A stretch of DNA of 64,000 nucleotides from Diadema antillarum (taxonomy: Eukaryota), in contig NW_027270935.1 in the NCBI RefSeq assembly GCF_040938485.1, forward strand, positions 682,001 through 746,000, given 5' to 3'. Below the pieces are notes generated by a model. That model ran no database searches. It saw only the letters and a program-made list of their open reading frames with translations, and was not told the origin of the DNA. Both the position numbers and the translations under genes were made by a program. Of this stretch, positions 41,806 to 63,097 are shown piece after piece. Positions within the stretch are counted from its first letter, which is position 1. The number at the start of each line of letters is the position of its first letter.

Positions 41806-42770
41806 ACTTATTGACTAATTACCCTTCATCAACATAAATAAGCACTGATTATTTAACCCTATTTCAACTGGGCTATTTGAGACCAGGCTTTTACTGAGGG
41901 GGGGGTCAATTTGACCCCCCTTCAGATCTCGGCCGCGGATTGCGCGATTGCCGCAAAATTTTGCCTAAACATAGAGCCAGACGTCAACTACAAGATTACA
42001 TGGTTATACAATCAAAAAAAAAATTGATTTTCTATTTTTAGTAAATTAATTGTGCAAATTTAAGCATGAAGTCATATTTTCACCTACAACTCCATTAAAA
42101 AGACTGAAGGATTGCTAAATTTTTGTGTCAGAGTTTCTCAAGACACATCGAACAATTATCTTGTAAAAAATTAGCACAATCAAAATCATTTTCTTTTGTT
42201 TTTTCTTGTTTTGTTAATTTCTTATGTATTTCATTGTTTTTTCGACCTTTTGTTTTCTATTGTTATTTTGCCAAAATTTGTTGCAGGTACTTTTTCAAGC
42301 TTATCTATATTAGAATCGATTAATTTCACTGGTTAAAAGTTGAAATAATCTAATTTATATCAATTTAACCAAAAAACAAAATTTACATTAAATTTGCACA
42401 CGATATCACAAATTTGAGCTGTTTTCGGGTTGACATGCATATGCAAAACATTACGTAACTTCAGAACGGTGTACCTGGACGTCGCAAATTTGGTCTCAAA
42501 ATATGCAGGAGACTTCAGTGAAAAAAGTCATGAAACAAAAAATCTTTGCGCGTTGCAGAATCGTAGCGCGAAATGTCGAGGGGGGGTCAATTTGACCCCC
42601 CCCCCAAGTTGGAATAGGGTTAATGTTCTAGTAGTAGCCATGATTGGAAAAAAAGAAAGTCATGGACATACACACTAGGGTATGCCTGTGATTTCTTTAT
42701 CATGGCTATTACTAGAACACTGAATAATGGGGGCTTGTTTACGTTGATGAAGGGAAATTTGTCAATAAGT
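41806..42770. mobile_element. Older ~195-bp palindromic (foldback) element split by a piggyBac-like insertion
   Basis: 41806-41852 joined to 42624-42660 is the reverse complement of about 42680-42770. Confidence 0.75.
41853..42623. mobile_element. piggyBac-like non-autonomous element (~770 bp)
   Basis: TTAA-CCCTATTTCAACT ... AGTTGGAATAGGG-TTAA. Subterminal palindromes GGGGGGTCAATTTGACCCCCC near both ends. No transposase ORF. Confidence 0.88.
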
Positions 42771-43062
42771 TGCAAAAAACAACAACTAAACACATGAATG
42801 CATTATTGATTTGAGTAAATTAGATGCATATGTAACTCAACAAGTAGAAAAACACTGCTGAAATATGCACTTCATTCTGCAAATATGCATGAATGATCTA
42901 CCATTATTCATATTCATATCTCATACAAAGTGCAAATGTCTATGCAACCAAATCTTACACTGTATGGCATCAACATATCAGTGAGATTTGATGTATATGA
43001 AAGTCCAATTGTCCATGAATAAGTCCATAAATATTTTCACCAAAGACTGTTGAGAATGTGAG

Positions 43063-46000
43063 CTAGAATCCTTTCTCCTCAAGCCACTGTCGAGCTTTAT
43101 CCTCATATAGCCCTTTGTAGCGTATCCTCATGGCGTACTCATTCACGGTGACTGGAATTGCTTTGCCTTCTTGCTCCTCAAGGTAATGCTGTAGATCTGT
43201 TGCAAGTGTCTGTAACACAAAACATAGGAAAATGAACTCAAAACCAACAAGACATTTCTGAGTATATCAGTTTCATCTATTGGATGCAGCCACAGAGAAT
43301 TCTTATAACTTTTTTGAGGTAGTACTTCAAGAGGACACCTGGCTGTGGCTAGTTTGTTAAACTCAACATGTGTATGTTATCAAAGCTTTTTAGCATTCCT
43401 CCCCACATCCAGCATTTCCGTAAACTTACAATATTCTGTAAACTTATCCTTTATTATGCATTGTGATGTAATCTATGTATTCAATTTCTGTAAAGTATTA
43501 ATGTTTCTGTTGGAAAAGGAAAAAAATGCATGAATAGAAATGAAAGTTGGCAACCAATCCTGGACATACTGTAGACACAAATACTTTCAGAAATTAGCTA
43601 TTTGCCAAAATCATTGGGACCACCCTCCCCTCCCCTCTAGTGGACCAAATGAGGCCATCTCCTTGCACTTAGTTAACTTGATGCTAATAAATTAAAGCTG
43701 GGCTAGTCTTCTCCCTTTCCTTATTTTTTTATTTATTCATTTTTTGCTTTTGTTTGCCAGAGCCTGGTCCCTACACCCCTTTTTGTTACTGTACTCATTT
43801 TAACAACTTGAAATTGTATAATCGTGTGGATAACCCCTACATCTCAGTCGGCTAAAATCTCCCTCTAGCACATTTTTCAAGAATGACAAATAAGAAAAAA
43901 ACAAACAACATTTTATCATTATTGCTCATGCCAAGATTCTTGCCAACATTGATCAACCTCAGGAATATCCTTCACAACTTGCATTATTCATTTGGTGTGT
44001 ATGTATATACTTCATGAACTTGGCTCAAGCAGCTCAATCTATGTCTTACATCTTTCAAGAGCAATAAAAGAATAAAGTTTGAATGATTTTGCTGGTTGGT
44101 TTCCACATAATCACAGTGATACCCTAGCTTAAATGGACTGACTTTATAATAGACTTACAGAACTGAATACTGTTTGTCATGGAGAACAGGAAGCGAAGCC
44201 TTACCCATATATCTCCTCTAACATGCTTGATGACAGTCCAATGCTGGTTTGAGCTCCTAGTTTCTAGGTACACTGGAACAGCATGGAATCTTGTCCTTTT
44301 CACCCTGTATGGTGTATCAGCTGAGGCTCCTATGGGTTAAAACGATAAACAATTGAAATTGTAAAATTGTATCACTTTGTAGCTCGAAAACAATGTCTGT
44401 CATTTCATTATGAATCATGCAAAACGCCTACATCTGTTTAAAACTGGAGCAGTAATTAAGTCCTACTTAAAGGCCCAGTAAAATGGGGAAACATAGAAAG
44501 TCCGATTGAATCATTCTTCATTTGCTGCTCACAGGGGTACATTTGAAAACCATCAGAAGTGCCCATTAGCAAATATATGTACCTTAAAGTGTATATGCAA
44601 TGATAATGGTCGATTCCACTTGAGATTCTTTGGCTGTGTGTGTACTTACACAGAGATAAGTGATAAGCTGCACACAATTCGTTTACAAGAATTCTCAAAT
44701 ATATCCAGGCCGGACCAGCCTTCCCACACAATGAATCCCCATGCTACCATTTACAGAACTGTTTATAAAGAAATATAAAACATATTAACTCACCTCACAG
44801 TCACTGTACATCATGAAATGCCCACCTGCTCAGCTGACTATAAGAACAACAAGCTCTACAATCAGTTATGCTTTTATTACATGCTTCCTTCTTACCCCCA
44901 ACTCGAAGAACAAAACTTCAGTTTGAATACCTTTTGGAGGAGACCATCCGGAAGGAGTTGGGTACACCTTGTGTTCAGGAGGTTGGGGGATCTGCAGTGT
45001 TGGTAAAAGACGCTCTACATGCTTAAAGTCCTCTTTGCATTCTATGACCTCTGTCCTTGCTTCATCTTTGATTGGCTCTCTCCTTGGGTAGGGTGAGATG
45101 AAGTAATAATTTCTCTTTGCTCTGCATGGTGAGGTGTGCAAAGGTCTTGGCATGGAAACCTGTCAAAGTCAAGACAGTAAAGGGACATGACACATTGAGA
45201 AGTTGAGAGAAAATGCATTCGAATATTCAAGAAATTATCATTATCAAAGTGTATTTGTAAATAAAACATTCAAATTCTTTGTCAATTGATGCATATAAAA
45301 TTAAATATCATTTCCAAGTATGATTTGATGTAAATATCTCATTCAGTCCATTGAAATCCTTCATTTTGTTACCTTTTTTGAACTGTTTTATTCCATTCCA
45401 ATTTCAAGTAGTTGAAACGGAATTGAGTATTTACAGTTCTTACATTGTACTTCATACTATACATTGTACATCATACATGTTTGCTTTGCGATTTTGTAGC
45501 TAGGGGTAAACTTAGTGTTATTCATTGCTAGACCTTGTAAATTGAGGGTGGATATGAAGATTCTCCAGTATGACCTATTTAGATTGCAAACAGCACATCA
45601 TACAAAATGACACCACATGAACTACACAGCACAGAAAGACAAACACAAACAAACAAAAGACATGCTATATTAATACAATAGCGATAAACACAAATAAAAA
45701 TACTGTGCATTAACATTGGTTGATAGTTATTAGTAACGAGAGGGCTGAACAAACGAGATGAAAACCAGTAATAGTATCTGGCAGTAAATTTAAATCTATA
45801 TCATCATCAGTGAGTGATTTGTCTAGCTTGTGACTGCACAAAGCATAAACTTTCCAATCAAGCAAGCAGTGAGTATGAGTGTCAGTGGTAGAGTGGAAAT
45901 TGGGGAAATTATTAACAGCAAGGACACCATTGTCACCAAAGTGAAAAACAGAACAATTTGGAGAATCCACGGGTAGGGCCCTGCTCACTCCCACAAGGCT

Positions 46001-46462
46001 ACACTATGAACACTTAGTCAAATCATTTCACGCTGTCCATGCACTGGCATAAATATACTTCTGAATTTATACCCTTTTTATATTGCTTTCTTTTCTTTTG
46101 GGTCCCCTGCCTGGCACAGGACCCTGCCTGTGCTGTGTCTAGATCTAGTCTGTGACTAACTGCGACCAGCAGCCCCAACGTACAACGGCGGGTCTCCGGG
46201 GCTAGTCTGTGACTACAGGTGCCGTGACTGAGGCCGAGTCATTATGGCATGGGCGCGCGCGTGGGATGTCTGTGCGACCTCTCGAAGAAGAGCGCAGTTC
46301 GTGGCAATCATCTCATACACGTAGTATTAGATTCTGTCAGAAACAATCAAAACTCACCACTGGATTGAATCTTGTAACTTGCCCTTCATGTCGACCGTGA
46401 AAGGAGCTCATCCATGGTTTCAGTCTAAGAAAACGCACAAGTGACCACCTGGGCGCCGCCAT
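43063..46462 (-). CDS. MRPL49: Mitochondrial ribosomal protein mL49, 201 aa
   Basis: Exons 46462-46358, 45159-44931, 44329-44205 and 43209-43063, with phases 0/1/0 consistent. Motifs EDFKHVERLLP..IPQPPEHKVYPTPSGWSPP, PYRVKRTRFHAVPVY, VRGDIW and terminal WLEEKGF*. The Arg-rich N-terminus resembles a mitochondrial presequence. Confidence 0.95.
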
Positions 46463-46550
46463 ATTTCAAGCGCTTGATCATACATTTGAGGTTGGCGGCG
46501 CTGTTTCCCCAAGAATTTCTTTTCCTTGCGACATCGTGGATTTACGAAAG
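46456..46550. promoter_or_regulatory. Bidirectional MRPL49/FAU promoter core and putative FAU non-coding exon 1 (46519-46550)
   Basis: TTCTTTTCC TCT-initiator/5'TOP tract at 46517-46525. AAG|GTGGTG donor at 46551. YY1-like GCCGCCATATTT overlaps the MRPL49 ATG. TSS and donor are inferred. Confidence 0.6.
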
Positions 46551-48589
46551 GTGGTGAAATAATCTCCCCATATAATGCAAAATTTAAGACTTAGATTGTA
46601 TCTTTGCGATCAGATATCAATCAGACAGTGTCATATATGACTGAGGAATTTTGACTTTCTTTGTGAGTGACTCTTCATGAGATTTGATAGGCCATTTGTA
46701 CTGTTTGAAGGGTAAGATAGTATTTACTTGTGGCTGTGTGGTGTGGGAGCTAACGTGATTAGAAATGCTTGGGCCTGTGTTAGATACACGCACGTAATGC
46801 TGTGCTGTGTGTATGTGTGTGATTGAAGCATTGCATTAGATGTCGACGATATGCATTGCCATTGCATTGGGCCAAGCGTGGAGTTTCTGAATGGCCTAGC
46901 GTAGCGTTAATCACTGTAGGAAGCTCAGCCATCATCGCATGCTACTGCTTTACTATATTTCCCATCCATTTTCGCACTTTTGTCATTCAATTTCAAAGAT
47001 TTATTATTCAATTTTGTCCCGAGAAGCACGTGGAACGCAAATCCTAACTACAGTTTTGTCAGTTGTCATGGGACATTGTAATAATGTATGAATTGTAATT
47101 CGTTTTTCGTCAAGCATTTTTGGGTAATCATGTAGAAATGCACACCTACCGTTCGCTTCGCTGTTTGTCAATAAAATTTTGTGCAGCTATTGGAGATGCT
47201 AAATTGAACCATATCAGAGAGTTTCCATTGAATTAGAAAGCCGAAAAGGTAAGAAAAATGAGAAATCGGAGTTGAAAAGTACGTCGGTCGCGAACATAGT
47301 CTCCAACGTAAAGTGGTGCACCGATTTCGCAGAGAACGATGTCAACGATTGTAATCGATTCTGGTAGTCTCTAATCAGCCGCTTACTAACAATATCGAAC
47401 TTGACTCGTGCAATACGTGTAGCCCCTACTTTCTTTTTCGTATTTTTTTCCTTATTGTTAGCTCACCTGAGTCGAAGGCTCAAGTGAGCTATTGTGATAG
47501 TTGTTTGTTTTCATTGCCACTATCATGATTATCACTATTCAAATTATTGATACGATTATTCATACCAGGATTAAGACACCGATCCTTTCTTTAAAAATTG
47601 TGGCAAGTACAAATGTATTGATTTCATCATGACAAAAGTTGATAATAATTCAAATTGAATAGTGTTGAAGGGAGTAGAATGAGGTTGACGGAAAAGTGGA
47701 AGAAAAAGGTTAGGCTATTACCAGGGAGAGAGAAAGAGAGAGAAAAGAAGATGAGAAGGAAGTTGAATTCAAAGGGGGTTTGTTTCTAGTACCTTCATAA
47801 TTTATAGGCCTAATTAAATTAATAAATTAATGAGAATAGTATTACTAAAAGTGTATGTTACACAATCATGTATTGTGGACTTCTTAAAGTGCTCATTTTA
47901 CCTAAAAAGAAACAGAATATTAATTGAAATGGTAATATGTTTTTGATTGATAAGTTCAACTTAAATTGTTTTTATGATAGTATTTATTTTTCCATTTCAT
48001 TTTCTTAGTTATGTATACAAAAACTGCAACCCCAGTAATGAGTATTTGCTTTTGTTTTGTGGTAAAAATCAATTTTATTGTGCAATATTCATAATGGATA
48101 ATTCCCATTTTTTCATATATCTTTTACTGTTTTGTACACATATTATCTGTCCAACATTTAGTCAGCAAAAAAATGTTGACAGATATACAGTCACACGCAG
48201 GAGAAAATTACATAAAACGATAAAAAACAGACGCATCAAGATCACTTTCTTTCTTCCACATTTTACTGTCGAGCCGACGTAATTATTGTGGTTAAACACC
48301 AAACAAGCGGCTGTATTACAGACTAAAACAATCGATTATCATCGTTATATCGCTCCTCCACATAATCGATCATCCATCATGCTACGCTGACACGGCCGTC
48401 GATCGGCGTACTTTTGAGTCAAAATTAGCTACTTTTCTTCTGCAATTGACTATGAAATTTCATGAAACCGTCAGATATGGTCCATCTTGACATTTCTGAT
48501 AGCCACAAGAAGTTTTCATTAACAAATTAAGGAAGGAAATGGTAGGTGTGCATGGTGTGCATTTCTACACGATTACCCATTTTTGAAGT

Positions 48590-49190
48590 CATGCATTCAA
48601 AATCGTCAATTGTCATTCAAATTCATCCCTCCTGCTGACTGTTCGCAGAATGTGAAGATCAAATTCGTTTTTGTTCACACAATTTCATGAATTTTTCATT
48701 CATATTAGCTAGATGTTGTCGTATGCGAGACGGTACGTCTGTTTGTATCAGTGTGTACTCGGATTGCTTGTGTGTGTACATGTGTGTCTGTATCTGTGGT
48801 TCTGTGTGTGTGGGGGGGGGGGGACACTTGTGTGTATGTCAACTCCTGAATGTAAAATGTGAACGGATACAGATAAAAAAATACATGAATGACTGGGAAA
48901 TCACACCGGATAGAGATATGAGACGAATATGAATGAAAATTTAACGAAAATGATTGACAAAAGACGAAATTGATCCTGCTGTTTTGAGTGCTGCGAGTGA
49001 GACTGACGAATTTGAACTGTAAATGACGAAAATGTATGCCAAATGACTAAATTGAATGGACTTATTTGAAAATGAATGACGAAAGACGAATTTGAAACTA
49101 AGATTGGCCTATTCCCGACATCCCGTGACGAAATTAAAGTAAAAATTTGTGAAATTGAATGAAAAAAGTTTGAAAATGAATGGGAAAACC
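48590..49190. repeat. Degenerate foldback element rich in GACGAAA/TTTCGTC subrepeats in FAU intron 1
   Basis: About 48657-48706 is the approximate reverse complement of about 48927-48976. The centre is (GT)n plus a G-run. Confidence 0.5.
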
Positions 49191-50006
49191 TATGGCTATA
49201 GTACCTGTGGCTGTACAGGTTATATATCTATACAGACAAAGTAAGTAATTCCCAGTTTAGCTCAGATTTAGAAGAAGATTTTGATTTACCAAAAGATTTG
49301 GATTTACCAAAAGATTTGGCCAAATCGTGATATCAGTCCCATCTCGTTCTGCATGTGCATCACCACTATGTGCAAAGTCTCTGGAGGTTGAAAGAAGTCC
49401 CCGGCTATGACGAAATTAATGGCGGTGAATGGAGTGGGGACCTATTTCGCGATAATGCCAAAGATTTTACTGACTTTGAAGATTTTCGAAGTGTTCATGT
49501 TTGACTTTTTCCAATATTTGAGTTACAAATGTTGGCCGCTCAGCTCAGTGCAGTATGAACGTGTATGGTGAACATTGCTTGGTTTTAAAGCTTAGATTGT
49601 GATTTTGATGCATGAATATTAATTAAGTGAAAGATGTTGATTACTCCATTATGAAAGTTATGTTCAGAAGTATGATGGGATTTTGCACTATGTGAAAGAT
49701 AACTTTATTGGGAGGAGTGATTGGCTTAAAGTCCGTAAAAAAAAAATAATAATAGTAATCAGAGGAAATGAATTTTAGATATAGCATCTTGTTCAGGAAT
49801 TATTACCAGAAAATCAAATCACAACTGAACAAGACCCATGACTTCCTGAGCTAGGGACCCACCTCACTAATTGTTTATCAAATGATCGCTCTTTCAAAGG
49901 AGACGAGGCATAGGATGATAGGGATGATGAAGCAGAATTATATCATTTTGTTGTTTTGCTTATAAATTGGTAACTAACTGGCTGTCTCTTACATTTTTGT
50001 ATAGAC

Positions 50007-50039
<33 letters not shown>

Positions 50040-50793
50040 ATGTTATATACACACTTCTTTGGGGGTGTTATTAAGAACATGGACTAGGCAGCATCTTTGT
50101 TGTATGAAGTTTCTTGATATTCCTGTTGAGAGTAACGAGGTTCTCTTGTTGTGTTCATATCTGAATGCCAATAGAAACAATATACACTGTACATACCATT
50201 TGATTCACACGCCATACCCCGGGGTACGGCATTGTGTAGCGCCATCACGTGTCCATTATTATTCAGTTGTGCAATGTTCAGTCATGGCAACTATTTTCTC
50301 ATCATCAGATAAGATGTATGCTATCAGTAAACACGCACTTCATCATTCATTCATTCATTGAATGCTAGAACATTATTGAAAGTAACTGACACTGTCTTGG
50401 ATAATAAACAAAATTTGATTTCCAGTCTCATTCAAAGTCAACTTTACAAAATCAGTTCTTACAATAACATGTACAATAATATTAAACAGTGAAAATTACA
50501 ACAGAGCATGTAAATGAAAAAAAAAATATTTGCATGCATTAATTGTTGCATAATCACAAACAAGAAAACAATTTGTGCATAATGATAGTAAAAAATTATT
50601 TTTACACATTTTTTGGTAACCCAGTGTACAGCACTGAAAAAAAAAAAAATATATATATATATATAATTCAACAAAATGGCAAATTTTCATTTAGTACCCC
50701 AGGGTACAACATATTGCATCATTTAACAATCTGAAATTACATCCTGAGGGAAATGAAAATCTTTTTTTTTTTACTTCTGTGCACAGCATCAAG

Positions 50794-52724
50794 ATGCAAC
50801 TGTTTCTACGAGCTGATCAAACCCTCACCGTTGAGGTGACTGGGGAGGAATCTGTCAGTGATCTGAAGGTAAGTTTAGCTGCCAAGCTTTTTGACATAAG
50901 CTGAACTATCTATCCCCCCCCCCCCGACCCAATGCCCAAATTCTTGAGCTGATGCTTTGTCAGAAATAACATTCTCAGTATACACATGTATTCCTATGAA
51001 TGATCTTGATCACATGATCAGGATGACAGTATAATTCAAGACATGATTATAACCAAGGATTGTGGGCCAAATATTGCAGGAATCATTAGGGGGGGGGGGG
51101 GGGGGGAGGGACTGGATGTAGTTTGTACAGATGATGGTTGTTCCTGAAAGGGAGGCCCCTAGGGTGGGCCCATGCATGCAAAAATAAGGTAAGTTTCATT
51201 CTTTTTATTTACATCCTCTGTTTAAAAACAAGTAGCTGGAATTCGACCAAACTTGGCAGGAGTGATCAGTGGTTAGACCCAAATACTCCAAAGTAGGAGG
51301 GTATTACACCTAAGAGGCCTACATCAATTCCTGGAAGTTCTTTTTTTTTTTTTTTTTTTTTTGAGGGAAAAAGGATGCCCTGCTCAAATTAGGGCTGGAC
51401 TTGTGGGTCTTTTGTTGTGTTTCGTCAGTGAATGAATGAATAAAATGACCATTATCACCTTTTATGCAGGTAATGATCCAGGGGCTGTCTGGACTTCCAG
51501 TCACAGAGCAAGTCCTCTCATGCTGTGGCACCCCACTGGATGAGGACCTGACCCTGACCCAGAATGGACTCCAGGACCTCAGCACAGTGGACCTCTCTGG
51601 CCGCCTGCTTGGAGGCAAAGTTCACGGCTCCCTGGCCCGTGCTGGCAAAGTGCGGGGACAGACGCCAAAGGTATCAATATACCAACACATATGTTAATGA
51701 CATGTTTGCTAGTCATTTAGTAGGTCAATGAAGCTGGTGTTTTCATAGTTCACAAAAATGGCTTGCCTGCTAATTTAAGTATAAAGTAAATTCAATAAAT
51801 CAGATCAGTGTAATATGCTTAATTATTCATTTTAACTGGATTAGCAACCGAACAATATTATGAAACAGTTTAATCAGAAAAGGCCATGACAGCAATATTA
51901 TACTATCATATATGTGTGATATTATCTCATTTTTTCTGCTGTACATGCATGCCAGGCACAACTCATATGTCTTGACTGTAGCACTAAATACTGATTTTGT
52001 GGCTGCACCTGGCAAGCAGCACTGTGTATTTGAGTACTCCCTCTAGAGCCAGAAACACTAAAATACTCTTCTGTAATGATCTGTGGTTTGTCACGGTGTT
52101 AAAGTTAGGCAGCCAAAGAATATAGTTGGTGTCCTGTTTTTCTGTTGACCCGATTCCGATGTATTTTGTCATTGCTTTTTAAGTTGTCTATTTTGTAGAA
52201 TGATATATGAAAGTGTTGAGGTGCCTTATTCCTATTTTTCTGGCATTTTATGTGACCTTTCAAGTTTTCTGCCACAAAGTGCCTTGCTATTGTCCTTGGG
52301 AAGTCAATAAGACATCTTAAATGATGGAAGGGAGTTTCAGTAGAAACCTTTTTTCCTCATGTGATGTAACAATACTGTTATCTGTTATCCCCTTTCAGAA
52401 TTTGGCAAAATTTACACAAACTAGTGTAAATAAAATTGTTATGCTTATTCATAGTTTTAGTGCTGCTGTTTATTTTCTTCATTGTAATGGAATGTCTGTG
52501 TTTCATAAATTGAAATTTTCTATACAGCAGTACAATTTTCACCTAAGGTGCCACTTTACATGAAGTGTCTGACATGTTTTATTTCATCCACTTTGTAGGT
52601 TGACCCTCAGGAAAAGAAGAAGAAGAAGGTCGGCCGCGCCAAACGCCGCATGCAGTACAACCGCCGCTTCGTCAATGTCGTCCAGACCTTTGGAAAGAGG
52701 CGTGGACCGAACTCGAACTCCTAA
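50794..52724 (+). CDS. FAU: FUBI-40S ribosomal protein eS30 fusion, 133 aa
   Basis: Exons 50794-50868, 51470-51670 and 52599-52724, all phase 0. A 74-aa ubiquitin-like domain ends in RLLGG, followed by the 59-aa [18 protein letters not shown]...[19 protein letters not shown]. Confidence 0.98.
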
Positions 52725-52800
52725 GTCATCGTTGCAACTTTCATAGCCCACAAAATGTTGCTCAATTCTACTGTAAAATAATACCAGTGCTATACAGATG

Positions 52801-52806
52801 AATAAA
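52801..52806 (+). terminator. FAU polyadenylation signal
   Basis: AATAAA 77 nt after the stop codon. Confidence 0.75.
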
Positions 52807-61337: not shown

Positions 61338-63097
61338 TCATCTACAGCAGCCTCCCAGTTTTGTTCCCTCTTCTGGCTCTGCAGAGCTGTCTTCTCTACT
61401 GTATAACTTGATACTCTGGAGCTGTTCATCTATCTCTTTCTTGTTCTTGTCCATGACATTCTTCACAAGTGTTTCAAATGCCTGCACAGAAAAGATGCCA
61501 GAGTCAAGAATACGCACATCGATAGACGATAAAAGAATCATGTCAAGAATTGATCATTTGCATTTTTATACAGGAACATGTATCAGCCTTCACTAAAGTT
61601 GTCAATCTTAATTCATGAAGCAACAAACAAACACACATTTACTCTTTTTTCTCCTTTTTTTCTTTTAATTTTTCTTCCATACACTGATAGTTTGAAAGCA
61701 AACATAGTGTGTACATTCACATAATAATGATAAATATTATTGGAGATTGGCATGCAGAATTCAATAACTTGAGTTTAAGAGATTGACGAGAGATGAGAGA
61801 CAACCCCTCCCCGCAAAAAAAAAAAAAAAAAAAAAGGAGAGAGAGAGAGAAAAAAAAAATATATAATCAATTCATTAAAGGAGAAATCAGCTGGACTGGC
61901 AACTTGCCATACAAAAACTCACAATTACCTCTGTAAAAATGTCTAAATGGGCAAACAGAGTAAAAGTATGAACAATTAATGAAATACGAACAAAAAAATA
62001 CAATTAAAAAGCAAAAAAAAAGCAGGAAATTCATGCACAATGAAATGGCTGTGTTTGATAGTGCTTTTATGGAGTTGCTCAGCCAATTTTTGATTTGTAG
62101 TAATAATCCTACATAAACCCTTACACCCTTTGGTCTTTTAAATGCCGGTTACAATGAAGTAAAAATTCAGGCCACAACATTATCCACTCTATGTATTTTT
62201 ATTATATATTTGTTTGGTTATAATGAAATTTCGATATAACGAAAGAAAACTGCCGGTCTCGAAGACTTCGTTATTGTGCTTAGCTTTCTATGACATCTAC
62301 AAAATGAATATGCATCTAAATCACATGTGGTCTCCTGTTTTGATTTTATTTCACTGGTCAAAAAAACAACAACAACAACAACAACAACACAAAACAGCTG
62401 AATAACATTTCACTTCTTGACTTGACTTACGAGTTGTATATTGTCTCCATTGAAGGCACTAGCTTCGATGAAGTCAAGATTTTCTTTCTTTGCATACTGT
62501 AACAGAAAATGGGAGAAAAAGAAGTGAAGAAAGAGGAGAAAAGTTTGATCAGAAGAGTGCAGAGTAGGACATATGGTGAATTTAAATAGGTAACACTACA
62601 GCTGTTAGTATGAACAGGAACACTGACCTTAATCACAGAAAAGTCAAAGCCATATACATGCATTTATCACTATCCTCCCTCATTTCTCATTCTATCTCCC
62701 ATTGCCTTTTTTAAAATCGATCCTCTGAAAATAAACAGTTCTTTTAATCTTTAAATGGAACAGCACAATCAGCATGTAGCTGACTAATGCAAACCAAGAC
62801 ATTTTCTCTGGCATGAAACTTTTGCAAAGTTTCAGGATTCGTGAAAGTAAAATGCACCCAAAAGGTTTTGTCTGTATACACAATGCATTGATTGCCAGTT
62901 GCAATTCGCAATTCGCAGTTGCAGTTCATCCCGCGAAAAAGGCCACTGGCTGCAATTCACTAAAGTTTCATGTTGTGAATGTTTCCACTTTTACAGTAAC
63001 AGGTTCTTACCGACTCTCCCTCTTCCTTGGACACTACACGTAATGACTCGGCATCAGATTTATTTGCCACCAATATCTTCACAATGTCTCCAGCATC
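61338..63097 (-). CDS. Rab-family small GTPase, last three coding exons (5' exons not found in window)
   Basis: Exons 63097-63011 (DAGDIVKILVANKSDAESLRVVSKEEGES), 62496-62431 (YAKKENLDFIEASAFNGDNIQL) and 61481-61338 (AFETLVKNVMDK...TKLGGCCR*), all phase 0. G4 NKxD motif, G5 EASA motif and terminal CCX prenylation motif. Confidence 0.88.
62145..62274 (+). mobile_element. Terminally truncated copy of the CAGTGSACTCCC MITE family in a Rab intron
   Basis: CCGGTTACAATGAAGTAAAAATTCAGGCCAC...GAAAACTGCCGG..GACTTCGTTAT matches the interior of 16951-17139. Confidence 0.75.

What the first reader, a model, noticed from the sequence alone, without database searches (positions are those of the whole stretch)
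43063..52724. MRPL49-FAU head-to-head pair with a ~57-bp core, apparently conserved with human
Seen: the MRPL49 ATG (46462, -) and the FAU TCT/TOP tract (C at 46519, +) are 57 bp apart, so the MRPL49 5' UTR is tiny or overlaps FAU exon 1. A YY1-type motif overlaps the ATG. Known: human MRPL49 was named NOF (neighbour of FAU) and lies divergently next to FAU at 11q13. Inference: the linkage of a cytosolic and a mitochondrial ribosomal protein gene predates the chordate split and is maintained by a shared promoter that may co-ordinate the two ribosomes.
Basis: partly seen in the sequence, partly recalled or inferred. Interest (0 to 1): 0.7.

Follow-up and report, generated by a model that had tools for sequence, protein, structure and literature searches.

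The report
Sea-urchin MRPL49-FAU head-to-head gene pair
In the sea urchin Diadema antillarum, a mitochondrial and a cytosolic ribosomal-protein gene start back to back about 57 bases apart; an acorn worm has the same layout, so the pairing is old, but other sea urchins have swapped the partner gene, so it is not fixed.

Summary
The window is Diadema antillarum (GCA_040938485.1). MRPL49 lies on the minus strand in 4 exons, with its first in-frame ATG at 46462. FAU lies on the plus strand, with coding exons from 50794 to 52724. It is supported by conservation instead. The tract, an invariant 12-mer and an AAG|GTG donor recur upstream of FAU in S. purpuratus and L. variegatus, where the flanks do not align. 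An acceptor exactly 7 nt before the FAU ATG is shared from urchins to a fish, so the transcription start must lie in an upstream exon. The alternative start near 47200 sits in a transposon that D. setosum lacks. The region just before 50787 has no CpG.

The hemichordate Glandiceps has the same MRPL49 / FAU / Arf-like order, with about 75 bp between the genes, so the pair is ancestral to Ambulacraria. Mammals keep the two genes as close neighbours. Camarodont urchins have FAM177 in MRPL49's place at the same FAU exon 1. Ciona, Lingula and gar faua also lack the pairing. The pair is therefore old but breakable, and co-regulation is untested. It is an ordinary bidirectional housekeeping promoter. 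This scan noted a similar ancient pair (HSPA14-MANF) elsewhere in this genome.

The parts
43063..43209 (-). MRPL49 exon 4, with stop TAG at 43065-43063
   Evidence: Acceptor ...ttacag|ACA; Pfam Img2, E 1.5e-7; the end of NCBI's CDS range maps to 43063
44205..44329 (-). MRPL49 exon 3
   Evidence: Splice sites read; Pfam Img2, 36.2 bits; tblastn match to Glandiceps L007
44931..45159 (-). MRPL49 exon 2
   Evidence: Splice sites read; 68% identical over 41 aa to Glandiceps L007 8493-8371
46358..46462 (-). MRPL49 exon 1. First in-frame ATG at 46462 and second at 46411. The N-terminus is basic with no acidic residues, like a mitochondrial presequence.
   Evidence: The D. setosum model (207 aa) starts at the homologous ATG. 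The 12-nt and 6-nt indels between the two Diadema species keep the frame. NCBI's D. antillarum model starts at 46411.
46455..46465 (-). YY1-type box AATATGGCGGC overlapping the MRPL49 ATG
   Evidence: Only match in the window, 0.03 expected; kept in D. setosum
46453..46501 (.). Core with a perfect 9-nt inverted repeat, GCGCCGCCA / TGGCGGCGC, 31 nt between the arms. The right arm lies about 18-26 nt upstream of the FAU start.
   Evidence: both arms kept in D. setosum; a TGGCGC-like box stands at a similar offset in S. purpuratus and L. variegatus
46519..46550 (+). FAU non-coding exon 1 (32 nt): C plus pyrimidine tract, invariant 12-mer 46528-46539, donor AAAG|GT
   Evidence: the same block stands upstream of FAU in four urchins, with unalignable flanks between Diadema and the camarodonts
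46677..46711 (+). Alternative 5' exon or donor used by NCBI isoform X1 (147 aa): ATG at 46677, donor GG|GTAAGA
   Evidence: The N-terminus of P0121 matches this stretch spliced to 50787. The extension is not conserved with the L. variegatus X1 extension.
46958..49187 (.). Non-autonomous element with terminal inverted repeats, inserted in FAU intron 1 and absent from D. setosum
   Evidence: The blastn gap 46946-49198 corresponds to only 11 nt in L003. It has 112-nt terminal inverted repeats (71% complementary) and an inner 26-nt inverted repeat at 96%. No long ORF.
50787..50868 (+). FAU exon 2: acceptor 7 nt before the ATG at 50794, then the first 25 codons of FUBI
   Evidence: The same -7 acceptor is present in 7 species.
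51470..51670 (+). FAU exon 3: rest of FUBI and the start of eS30
52599..52806 (+). FAU exon 4: eS30 C-terminus, TAA at 52722-52724, AATAAA at 52801-52806

Best explanation
This is a compact divergent (bidirectional) housekeeping promoter shared by MRPL49 (mitoribosomal mL49) and FAU (FUBI-eS30) in Diadema antillarum.

FAU most likely starts at or near C46519 on a pyrimidine (TOP/TCT-type) initiator. It makes a 32-nt non-coding exon 1 that is spliced across a 4.2-kb intron to an acceptor 7 nt before the ATG. That intron was enlarged by a 2.2-kb transposon.

MRPL49 most likely starts within the roughly 56 bp between the two genes. Its 5' UTR would be very short, and its start codon is embedded in a YY1-type box.

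The core sits in the only CpG-rich patch between two CpG-poor gene bodies. It carries a 9-nt inverted repeat, with one arm facing each gene.

The arrangement is inherited from at least the ambulacrarian ancestor, and probably from the deuterostome ancestor. It is not obligatory, because FAU's own start module has been kept while the partner changed in other lineages.

Shown: the gene models, the distances, the motifs, conservation of exon 1 and of the -7 acceptor, and the synteny pattern.

Inferred: the exact transcription starts, YY1 binding, TOP-type control, and any co-regulation.
For: - Gene models and domains.
- The window equals the D. antillarum assembly, which is annotated with Img2 and FAU genes.
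- FAU isoform X2 of NCBI (P0188, 133 aa) equals my exon model.
- Exon 1 block conserved in four urchins. The 12-mer is exact in all four, a pyrimidine tract precedes it, and an AAG|GTG donor follows 10-11 nt later. It is the only non-simple-repeat match between the Diadema and S. purpuratus upstream regions, and in L. variegatus the best one apart from the exon 2 start, though each pairwise hit alone is weak.
- The -7 acceptor is conserved in Diadema (2 species), S. purpuratus, L. variegatus, Glandiceps, Amphiura and gar.
- CpG observed/expected is 0.8-1.0 at 46000-46600, against 0.1-0.5 in the MRPL49 gene body. There is no CpG at 50400-50800.
- Single YY1-type hit. Inverted repeat.
- Hemichordate with the same three-gene order and a 75-bp gap.
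- Mammalian neighbourhood.
Against:
- NCBI's model of this assembly begins the MRPL49 CDS at 46411. This may mean the transcript evidence did not reach 46462.
- NCBI isoform X1 uses a stronger donor at 46711|46712, so some transcripts differ at the 5' end.
- The donor AAAG|GTGGTG is only moderate.
- The two Diadema species are 91% identical across this stretch (82% over the wider 46302-46945 match), so that comparison does not single out functional elements.
- The YY1-type box is not present at the Glandiceps MRPL49 ATG.
Confidence: 0.8

Rival explanations
1. FAU's main first exon is the one NCBI isoform X1 uses (donor after 46711). Its start would lie somewhere in 46551-46676, or at 46519 with read-through of the first donor. 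The gap to MRPL49 would then be 100-200 bp, and the 57-bp figure would be incidental.
For: The N-terminus of P0121 maps to 46677-46711 spliced to 50787. GG|GTAAGA is a better donor than AAAG|GTGGTG. The stretch is kept in D. setosum.
Against: Such an exon would carry upstream ATGs (for example at 46576 and 46638) and add a 14-residue extension to FUBI. L. variegatus X1 does not share that extension. Cross-order conservation stops at the AAG|GTG donor. D. setosum is annotated only with the 133-aa product.
Confidence: 0.15
2. MRPL49 translation starts at the second ATG (46411) and its transcription start lies between 46411 and 46462. The YY1-type box would then act as a promoter element, not a start-codon context. 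The two transcription starts would be 57-108 bp apart.
For: NCBI's CDS for this assembly starts at 46411 and gives 184 aa. Glandiceps MRPL49 is 176 aa.
Against: The D. setosum model starts at the ATG homologous to 46462. A 12-nt indel between the two ATGs keeps the frame. ATG 46462 has A at -3 and G at +4, and the 17 extra residues are basic with no acidic ones, as in a presequence.
Confidence: 0.3
3. The adjacency in Diadema and in mammals arose independently, because FAU's promoter readily takes up divergent partners.
For: FAU has different close divergent partners in camarodonts (FAM177), Ciona (RPS27A) and Lingula (FHA-RING). Gar faua lies in a different neighbourhood.
Against: A hemichordate shares not only MRPL49 but also the downstream Arf-like gene, in the same order and orientation. 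This makes common ancestry within Ambulacraria the simplest reading. For the link to chordates, only mammalian neighbourhood data were available.
Confidence: 0.12

Closest known systems
Human MRPL49 (alias NOF, neighbour of FAU) - FAU pair at 11q13
   Same: The same two orthologous genes lie next to each other. FAU has a non-coding first exon. Papers list FAU and MRPL49 among the nearest neighbours of SYVN1 in human, and in one 62-kb interval in cattle.
   Different: Orientation and spacing in human were not tested here and rest on my own knowledge. No human sequence was compared. The urchin intron 1 is 4.2 kb and holds a transposon.
Bidirectional CpG-rich housekeeping promoters (divergent gene pairs with starts less than 1 kb apart)
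   Same: Divergent orientation, a gap far below 1 kb, a CpG-rich patch, no TATA box seen, and housekeeping genes.
   Different: At 57 bp from ATG to the putative start, it is at the very short end of the range. The transcription starts were not measured.
TOP/TCT-type ribosomal-protein gene starts
   Same: C followed by 8 pyrimidines, a short 5' UTR (32 + 7 nt) without an upstream ATG, and a gene for a ribosomal protein.
   Different: Initiation at that C has not been shown. An invariant 12-mer follows the tract in echinoids, and I know no counterpart for it.
YY1 motifs overlapping start codons of genes with very short 5' UTRs (a class described in human core promoters; from my own knowledge)
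   Same: AANATGGCGGC with its ATG as the first in-frame start codon of a gene for a mitochondrial protein.
   Different: Binding is untested. The motif is absent at the Glandiceps MRPL49 ATG.
HSPA14-MANF head-to-head pair noted earlier in this genome (s1-217817)
   Same: Another divergent pair in Diadema reported as conserved across phyla.
   Different: The genes are unrelated. I did not check that note.

Membership tests
FAU (FUBI-eS30 fusion gene) | N-terminal ubiquitin-like domain fused to ribosomal protein eS30 | tested here: met
   Pfam ubiquitin plus Ribosomal_S30 on exon 3. The exon pieces align collinearly with FAU orthologues. NCBI D. antillarum isoform X2 is 133 aa.
MRPL49 / mL49 (Pfam Img2) | Img2 domain in a protein of about 170-200 aa with a basic N-terminus | tested here: met
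   Img2 on exon 3 (36.2 bits, cut-off 34.4) and on exon 4 (32 bits). The whole annotated product carries PF05046.
Bidirectional promoter pair | Two genes on opposite strands, pointing away from each other | tested here: met
Bidirectional promoter pair | Transcription starts less than 1 kb apart | tested here: inconclusive
   The first ATG of MRPL49 and the conserved FAU exon 1 are 57 bp apart. RNA 5' ends were not available.
Bidirectional promoter pair | Co-expression of the two genes | not testable with these tools
TOP/TCT-type ribosomal protein promoter | C at +1 followed by a run of 4-15 pyrimidines | tested here: met
   CTTTTCCTT at 46519-46527. The tract is kept, with only pyrimidine changes, in 4 urchins.
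TOP/TCT-type ribosomal protein promoter | Transcription actually initiates at that C | not testable with these tools
   No CAGE or reads.
YY1 start-codon motif class | AANATGGCGGC with the ATG used as start codon | tested here: inconclusive
   The motif is present and unique in the window. Use of this ATG is supported by D. setosum but not by NCBI's D. antillarum model.
Ancient conserved microsynteny | Same neighbours and orientation in different phyla | tested here: met
   Echinodermata (2 Diadema species) and Hemichordata (Glandiceps). Not met in camarodont urchins, Ciona, Lingula or gar faua.

The most novel reading that the evidence does not exclude
FAU's start module (pyrimidine initiator, about 32-nt exon 1, and the -7 5'UTR intron) is an intrinsically two-way promoter that persists as a unit and repeatedly takes up new divergent partners: MRPL49, FAM177, RPS27A, an FHA-RING gene. 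On this reading, selection acts on FAU having some partner, or simply tolerates one, and not on coupling the cytosolic and mitochondrial ribosomes. In camarodont urchins the rearrangement breakpoint fell inside the roughly 60-160 bp next to FAU exon 1.
Probability: 0.3. Interest if true: 0.5.

Novelty: new member of a known kind. Interest (0 to 1): 0.35.

Why it matters
The finding gives a dated natural experiment on whether very short bidirectional promoters lock gene pairs together. One pair is kept from acorn worm to Diadema, and probably to mammals, yet it is broken precisely at the promoter in other sea urchins while FAU's start module survives. That argues against a strong functional coupling of the cytosolic and mitochondrial ribosome genes through this promoter. 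It also marks a small set of elements worth testing in reporters: the pyrimidine start, an echinoid-invariant 12-mer, and the paired TGGCGGCGC boxes. Otherwise this is an ordinary housekeeping promoter, and both genes are already annotated in this genome.

Tried and rejected
- Exact look-up of the 133-aa product by reference P0121:15-147 found nothing on record. Two Acropora FAU ids were not on record either, so no cnidarian was tested.
- The first word search with exon 3 alone missed the urchin FAU cluster representatives, which are 147-148 aa and above the length cap. This was solved with an alignment of exon pieces plus full-length orthologues.
- Rfam: no snoRNA or other RNA family in the introns of either gene.
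- Alternative FAU start near 47200: rejected. It lies in a TIR element that D. setosum lacks.
- Alternative FAU start near 50700: rejected. There is no CpG at 50400-50800, and a conserved acceptor with a pyrimidine tract stands 7 nt before the ATG.
- FAM177 in the window: none found by tblastn with the ORFs of the camarodont loci.
- MRPL49 exons within 10 kb of FAU in S. purpuratus, L. variegatus, Amphiura, Lingula, gar and Ciona: none.
- Literature: no paper found on conservation of this pair or on 'neighbour of FAU'. Two papers with both gene names were irrelevant.
- The big protein search was not used.
- The spliced models were searched exon by exon by reference.
Full report
**What is there**

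The window is Diadema antillarum. Locus L002 (GCA_040938485.1, JBFRCO010000047.1) is identical to window 36677-62724, apart from 133 masked N. Earlier notes of this scan had named the species.

MRPL49 lies on the minus strand in four exons:
- 46462-46358, 45159-44931, 44329-44205 and 43209-43063, read.
- Exons 3 and 4 carry Pfam Img2.

FAU lies on the plus strand with three coding exons:
- 50787-50868 (ATG at 50794), 51470-51670, and 52599-52724 (TAA at 52722-4), read.
- Pfam finds ubiquitin plus Ribosomal_S30.
- The exon pieces align collinearly with FAU of a coral, Ciona and Xenopus.
- The 133-aa product equals NCBI isoform X2 of this species.

**The core**

- The first in-frame MRPL49 ATG is at 46462.
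- C46519 opens CTTTTCCTT, followed by GCGACATCGTGG and a donor AAAG|GT, with GT at 46551-2. The putative exon 1 is therefore 46519-46550 (32 nt), 57 bp from the ATG.
- AATATGGCGGC on the MRPL49 strand overlaps the ATG. It is the only AANATGGCGGC in 64 kb, against 0.03 expected.
- A perfect 9-nt inverted repeat, GCGCCGCCA / TGGCGGCGC, flanks 31 nt of the core, with one arm facing each gene.
- CpG observed/expected is 0.8-1.0 at 46000-46600. It is 0.1-0.5 in the MRPL49 gene body and mostly 0-0.6 in the FAU gene from 49600 to 52400.

**Is 46519 really the FAU start exon?**

Pyrimidine tracts alone mean little: there are 11 comparable tracts in 46463-50786. Three lines of comparative evidence support the call.

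1. The 12-mer is present exactly once, on the FAU strand upstream of FAU, in D. antillarum, D. setosum, S. purpuratus and L. variegatus.
   - In all four it follows a C plus pyrimidine tract by the same 9 nt.
   - An AAG|GTG donor follows it 10-11 nt later, giving a 31-32-nt exon.
   - The flanks between Diadema and the camarodonts do not align.
2. An acceptor lies exactly 7 nt before the FAU ATG in both Diadema species, S. purpuratus, L. variegatus, the hemichordate Glandiceps, the brittle star Amphiura and a gar. FAU therefore has an old 5'-UTR intron, and its start must be in an upstream exon.
   - 46946-49198 is missing from D. setosum. It is an element with 112-nt terminal inverted repeats at 46958-49187, so 47200 lies in a lineage-specific transposon.
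   - 50400-50800 has no CpG at all.

NCBI also annotates an isoform X1 (147 aa). Its first coding exon is 46677-46711, spliced to 50787. Its 14-residue extension is not shared with the X1 isoform of L. variegatus, and the exon would carry upstream ATGs. I read it as a minor 5' variant.

**The MRPL49 start**

NCBI's model of this assembly starts the CDS at the second ATG (46411, 184 aa). The D. setosum model (207 aa) starts at the ATG homologous to 46462. Between the two ATGs, a 12-nt indel between the species keeps the frame. The extra 17 residues are basic and lack acidic residues, as a mitochondrial presequence would. I favour 46462, with about 0.7 probability. Either way the two genes start within about 110 bp of each other.

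**How old is the pair, and how constrained?**

I used FAU as the anchor for all 12 context look-ups.

| Species | Divergent (upstream) neighbour of FAU | Other context |
|---|---|---|
| D. setosum | MRPL49 | Arf-like gene downstream |
| Glandiceps talaboti (hemichordate) | MRPL49 (CDS 6884-8949, minus strand; exons confirmed by tblastn) | FAU ATG at 10001; Arf-like gene downstream; candidate FAU exon 1 (CTTTTC...AGAG\|GTACGT) 75 bp from the MRPL49 ATG |
| S. purpuratus, L. variegatus | FAM177 | FAU exon 1 and Arf-like gene kept; no MRPL49 exon within 10 kb |
| Ciona | RPS27A | FAU is intronless |
| Lingula | FHA-RING gene | |
| Gar (faua) | none | sits between a PRPF39-like gene and FKBP3/FANCM |
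| Amphiura | nothing annotated within 10 kb | |

Papers list FAU and MRPL49 among the nearest neighbours of SYVN1 in human (PMC12164210) and in one 62-kb interval in cattle (PMC6332854). The head-to-head orientation in human and the alias 'neighbour of FAU' are from my own knowledge. No human sequence was fetched or compared.

**Reading**

The pair is ancestral at least to Ambulacraria and, with mammals, most simply to deuterostomes. It has been broken several times. In camarodont urchins the break fell right beside FAU exon 1, which stayed with FAU and now faces another gene about 160 bp away. That fits an ordinary two-way housekeeping promoter whose FAU half is the conserved unit. It does not fit a device that must couple the two ribosomes. 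Co-regulation, YY1 binding and TOP-type control are inferences.

**Limits**

- No RNA 5' ends were available.
- No amphioxus, starfish, tetrapod or cnidarian locus was examined.
- MRPL49 was never used as an anchor, because the word search's length cap excluded full-length MRPL49 when queried with single exons.
- The spliced models were searched exon by exon by reference, and the joined step was left out. Full-length products were used only as stored database proteins.

Noticed in passing
window 46958-49187: A 2.2-kb element with terminal inverted repeats (112-nt imperfect terminal repeats, an inner 26-nt inverted repeat at 96%, no long ORF) sits in FAU intron 1. It is absent from D. setosum. 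It is CpG-rich (observed/expected up to 1.5), which makes intron 1 look like a second CpG island.
   Followed up: partly
L001 7805-10402 (Ciona intestinalis): In Ciona the two ubiquitin-fusion ribosomal protein genes, RPS27A and an intronless FAU, lie head to head with about 500 bp between their start codons.
   Followed up: no
L004 7772-7965; L005 9277-9601: In camarodont urchins FAM177 replaces MRPL49 as FAU's divergent partner. In the L. variegatus annotation the FAM177 start codon (9601) lies inside FAU intron 1, about 300 bp past FAU exon 1, so the two genes would overlap at their 5' ends. In S. purpuratus they do not overlap.
   Followed up: partly
window 61338-62724 and beyond (minus strand); L003, L004, L005, L007: An Arf-family small GTPase gene (about 205-210 aa) lies tail to tail downstream of FAU in all four urchins and in the hemichordate. 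This FAU / Arf-like link is more widely kept than the MRPL49 / FAU link.
   Followed up: no
L009 (Lepisosteus oculatus): Gar 'faua' lies between a PRPF39-like gene and FKBP3/FANCM, a different neighbourhood from mammalian FAU. Fish faua may be a different whole-genome-duplication copy from the MRPL49-linked one. faub was not examined.
   Followed up: no
window 42756-42830 (+): A weak SNORD72-like C/D box match (31.5 bits, below the gathering score of 43) lies just beyond the 3' end of MRPL49, in a CpG-rich patch at 42200-42800.
   Followed up: no
L003 1-8237 (D. setosum): MRPL49 exons 2-4 are not within 8.2 kb of exon 1 in D. setosum, whereas intron 1 is 1.2 kb in D. antillarum. That is a large intron size difference between congeners.
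   Followed up: no
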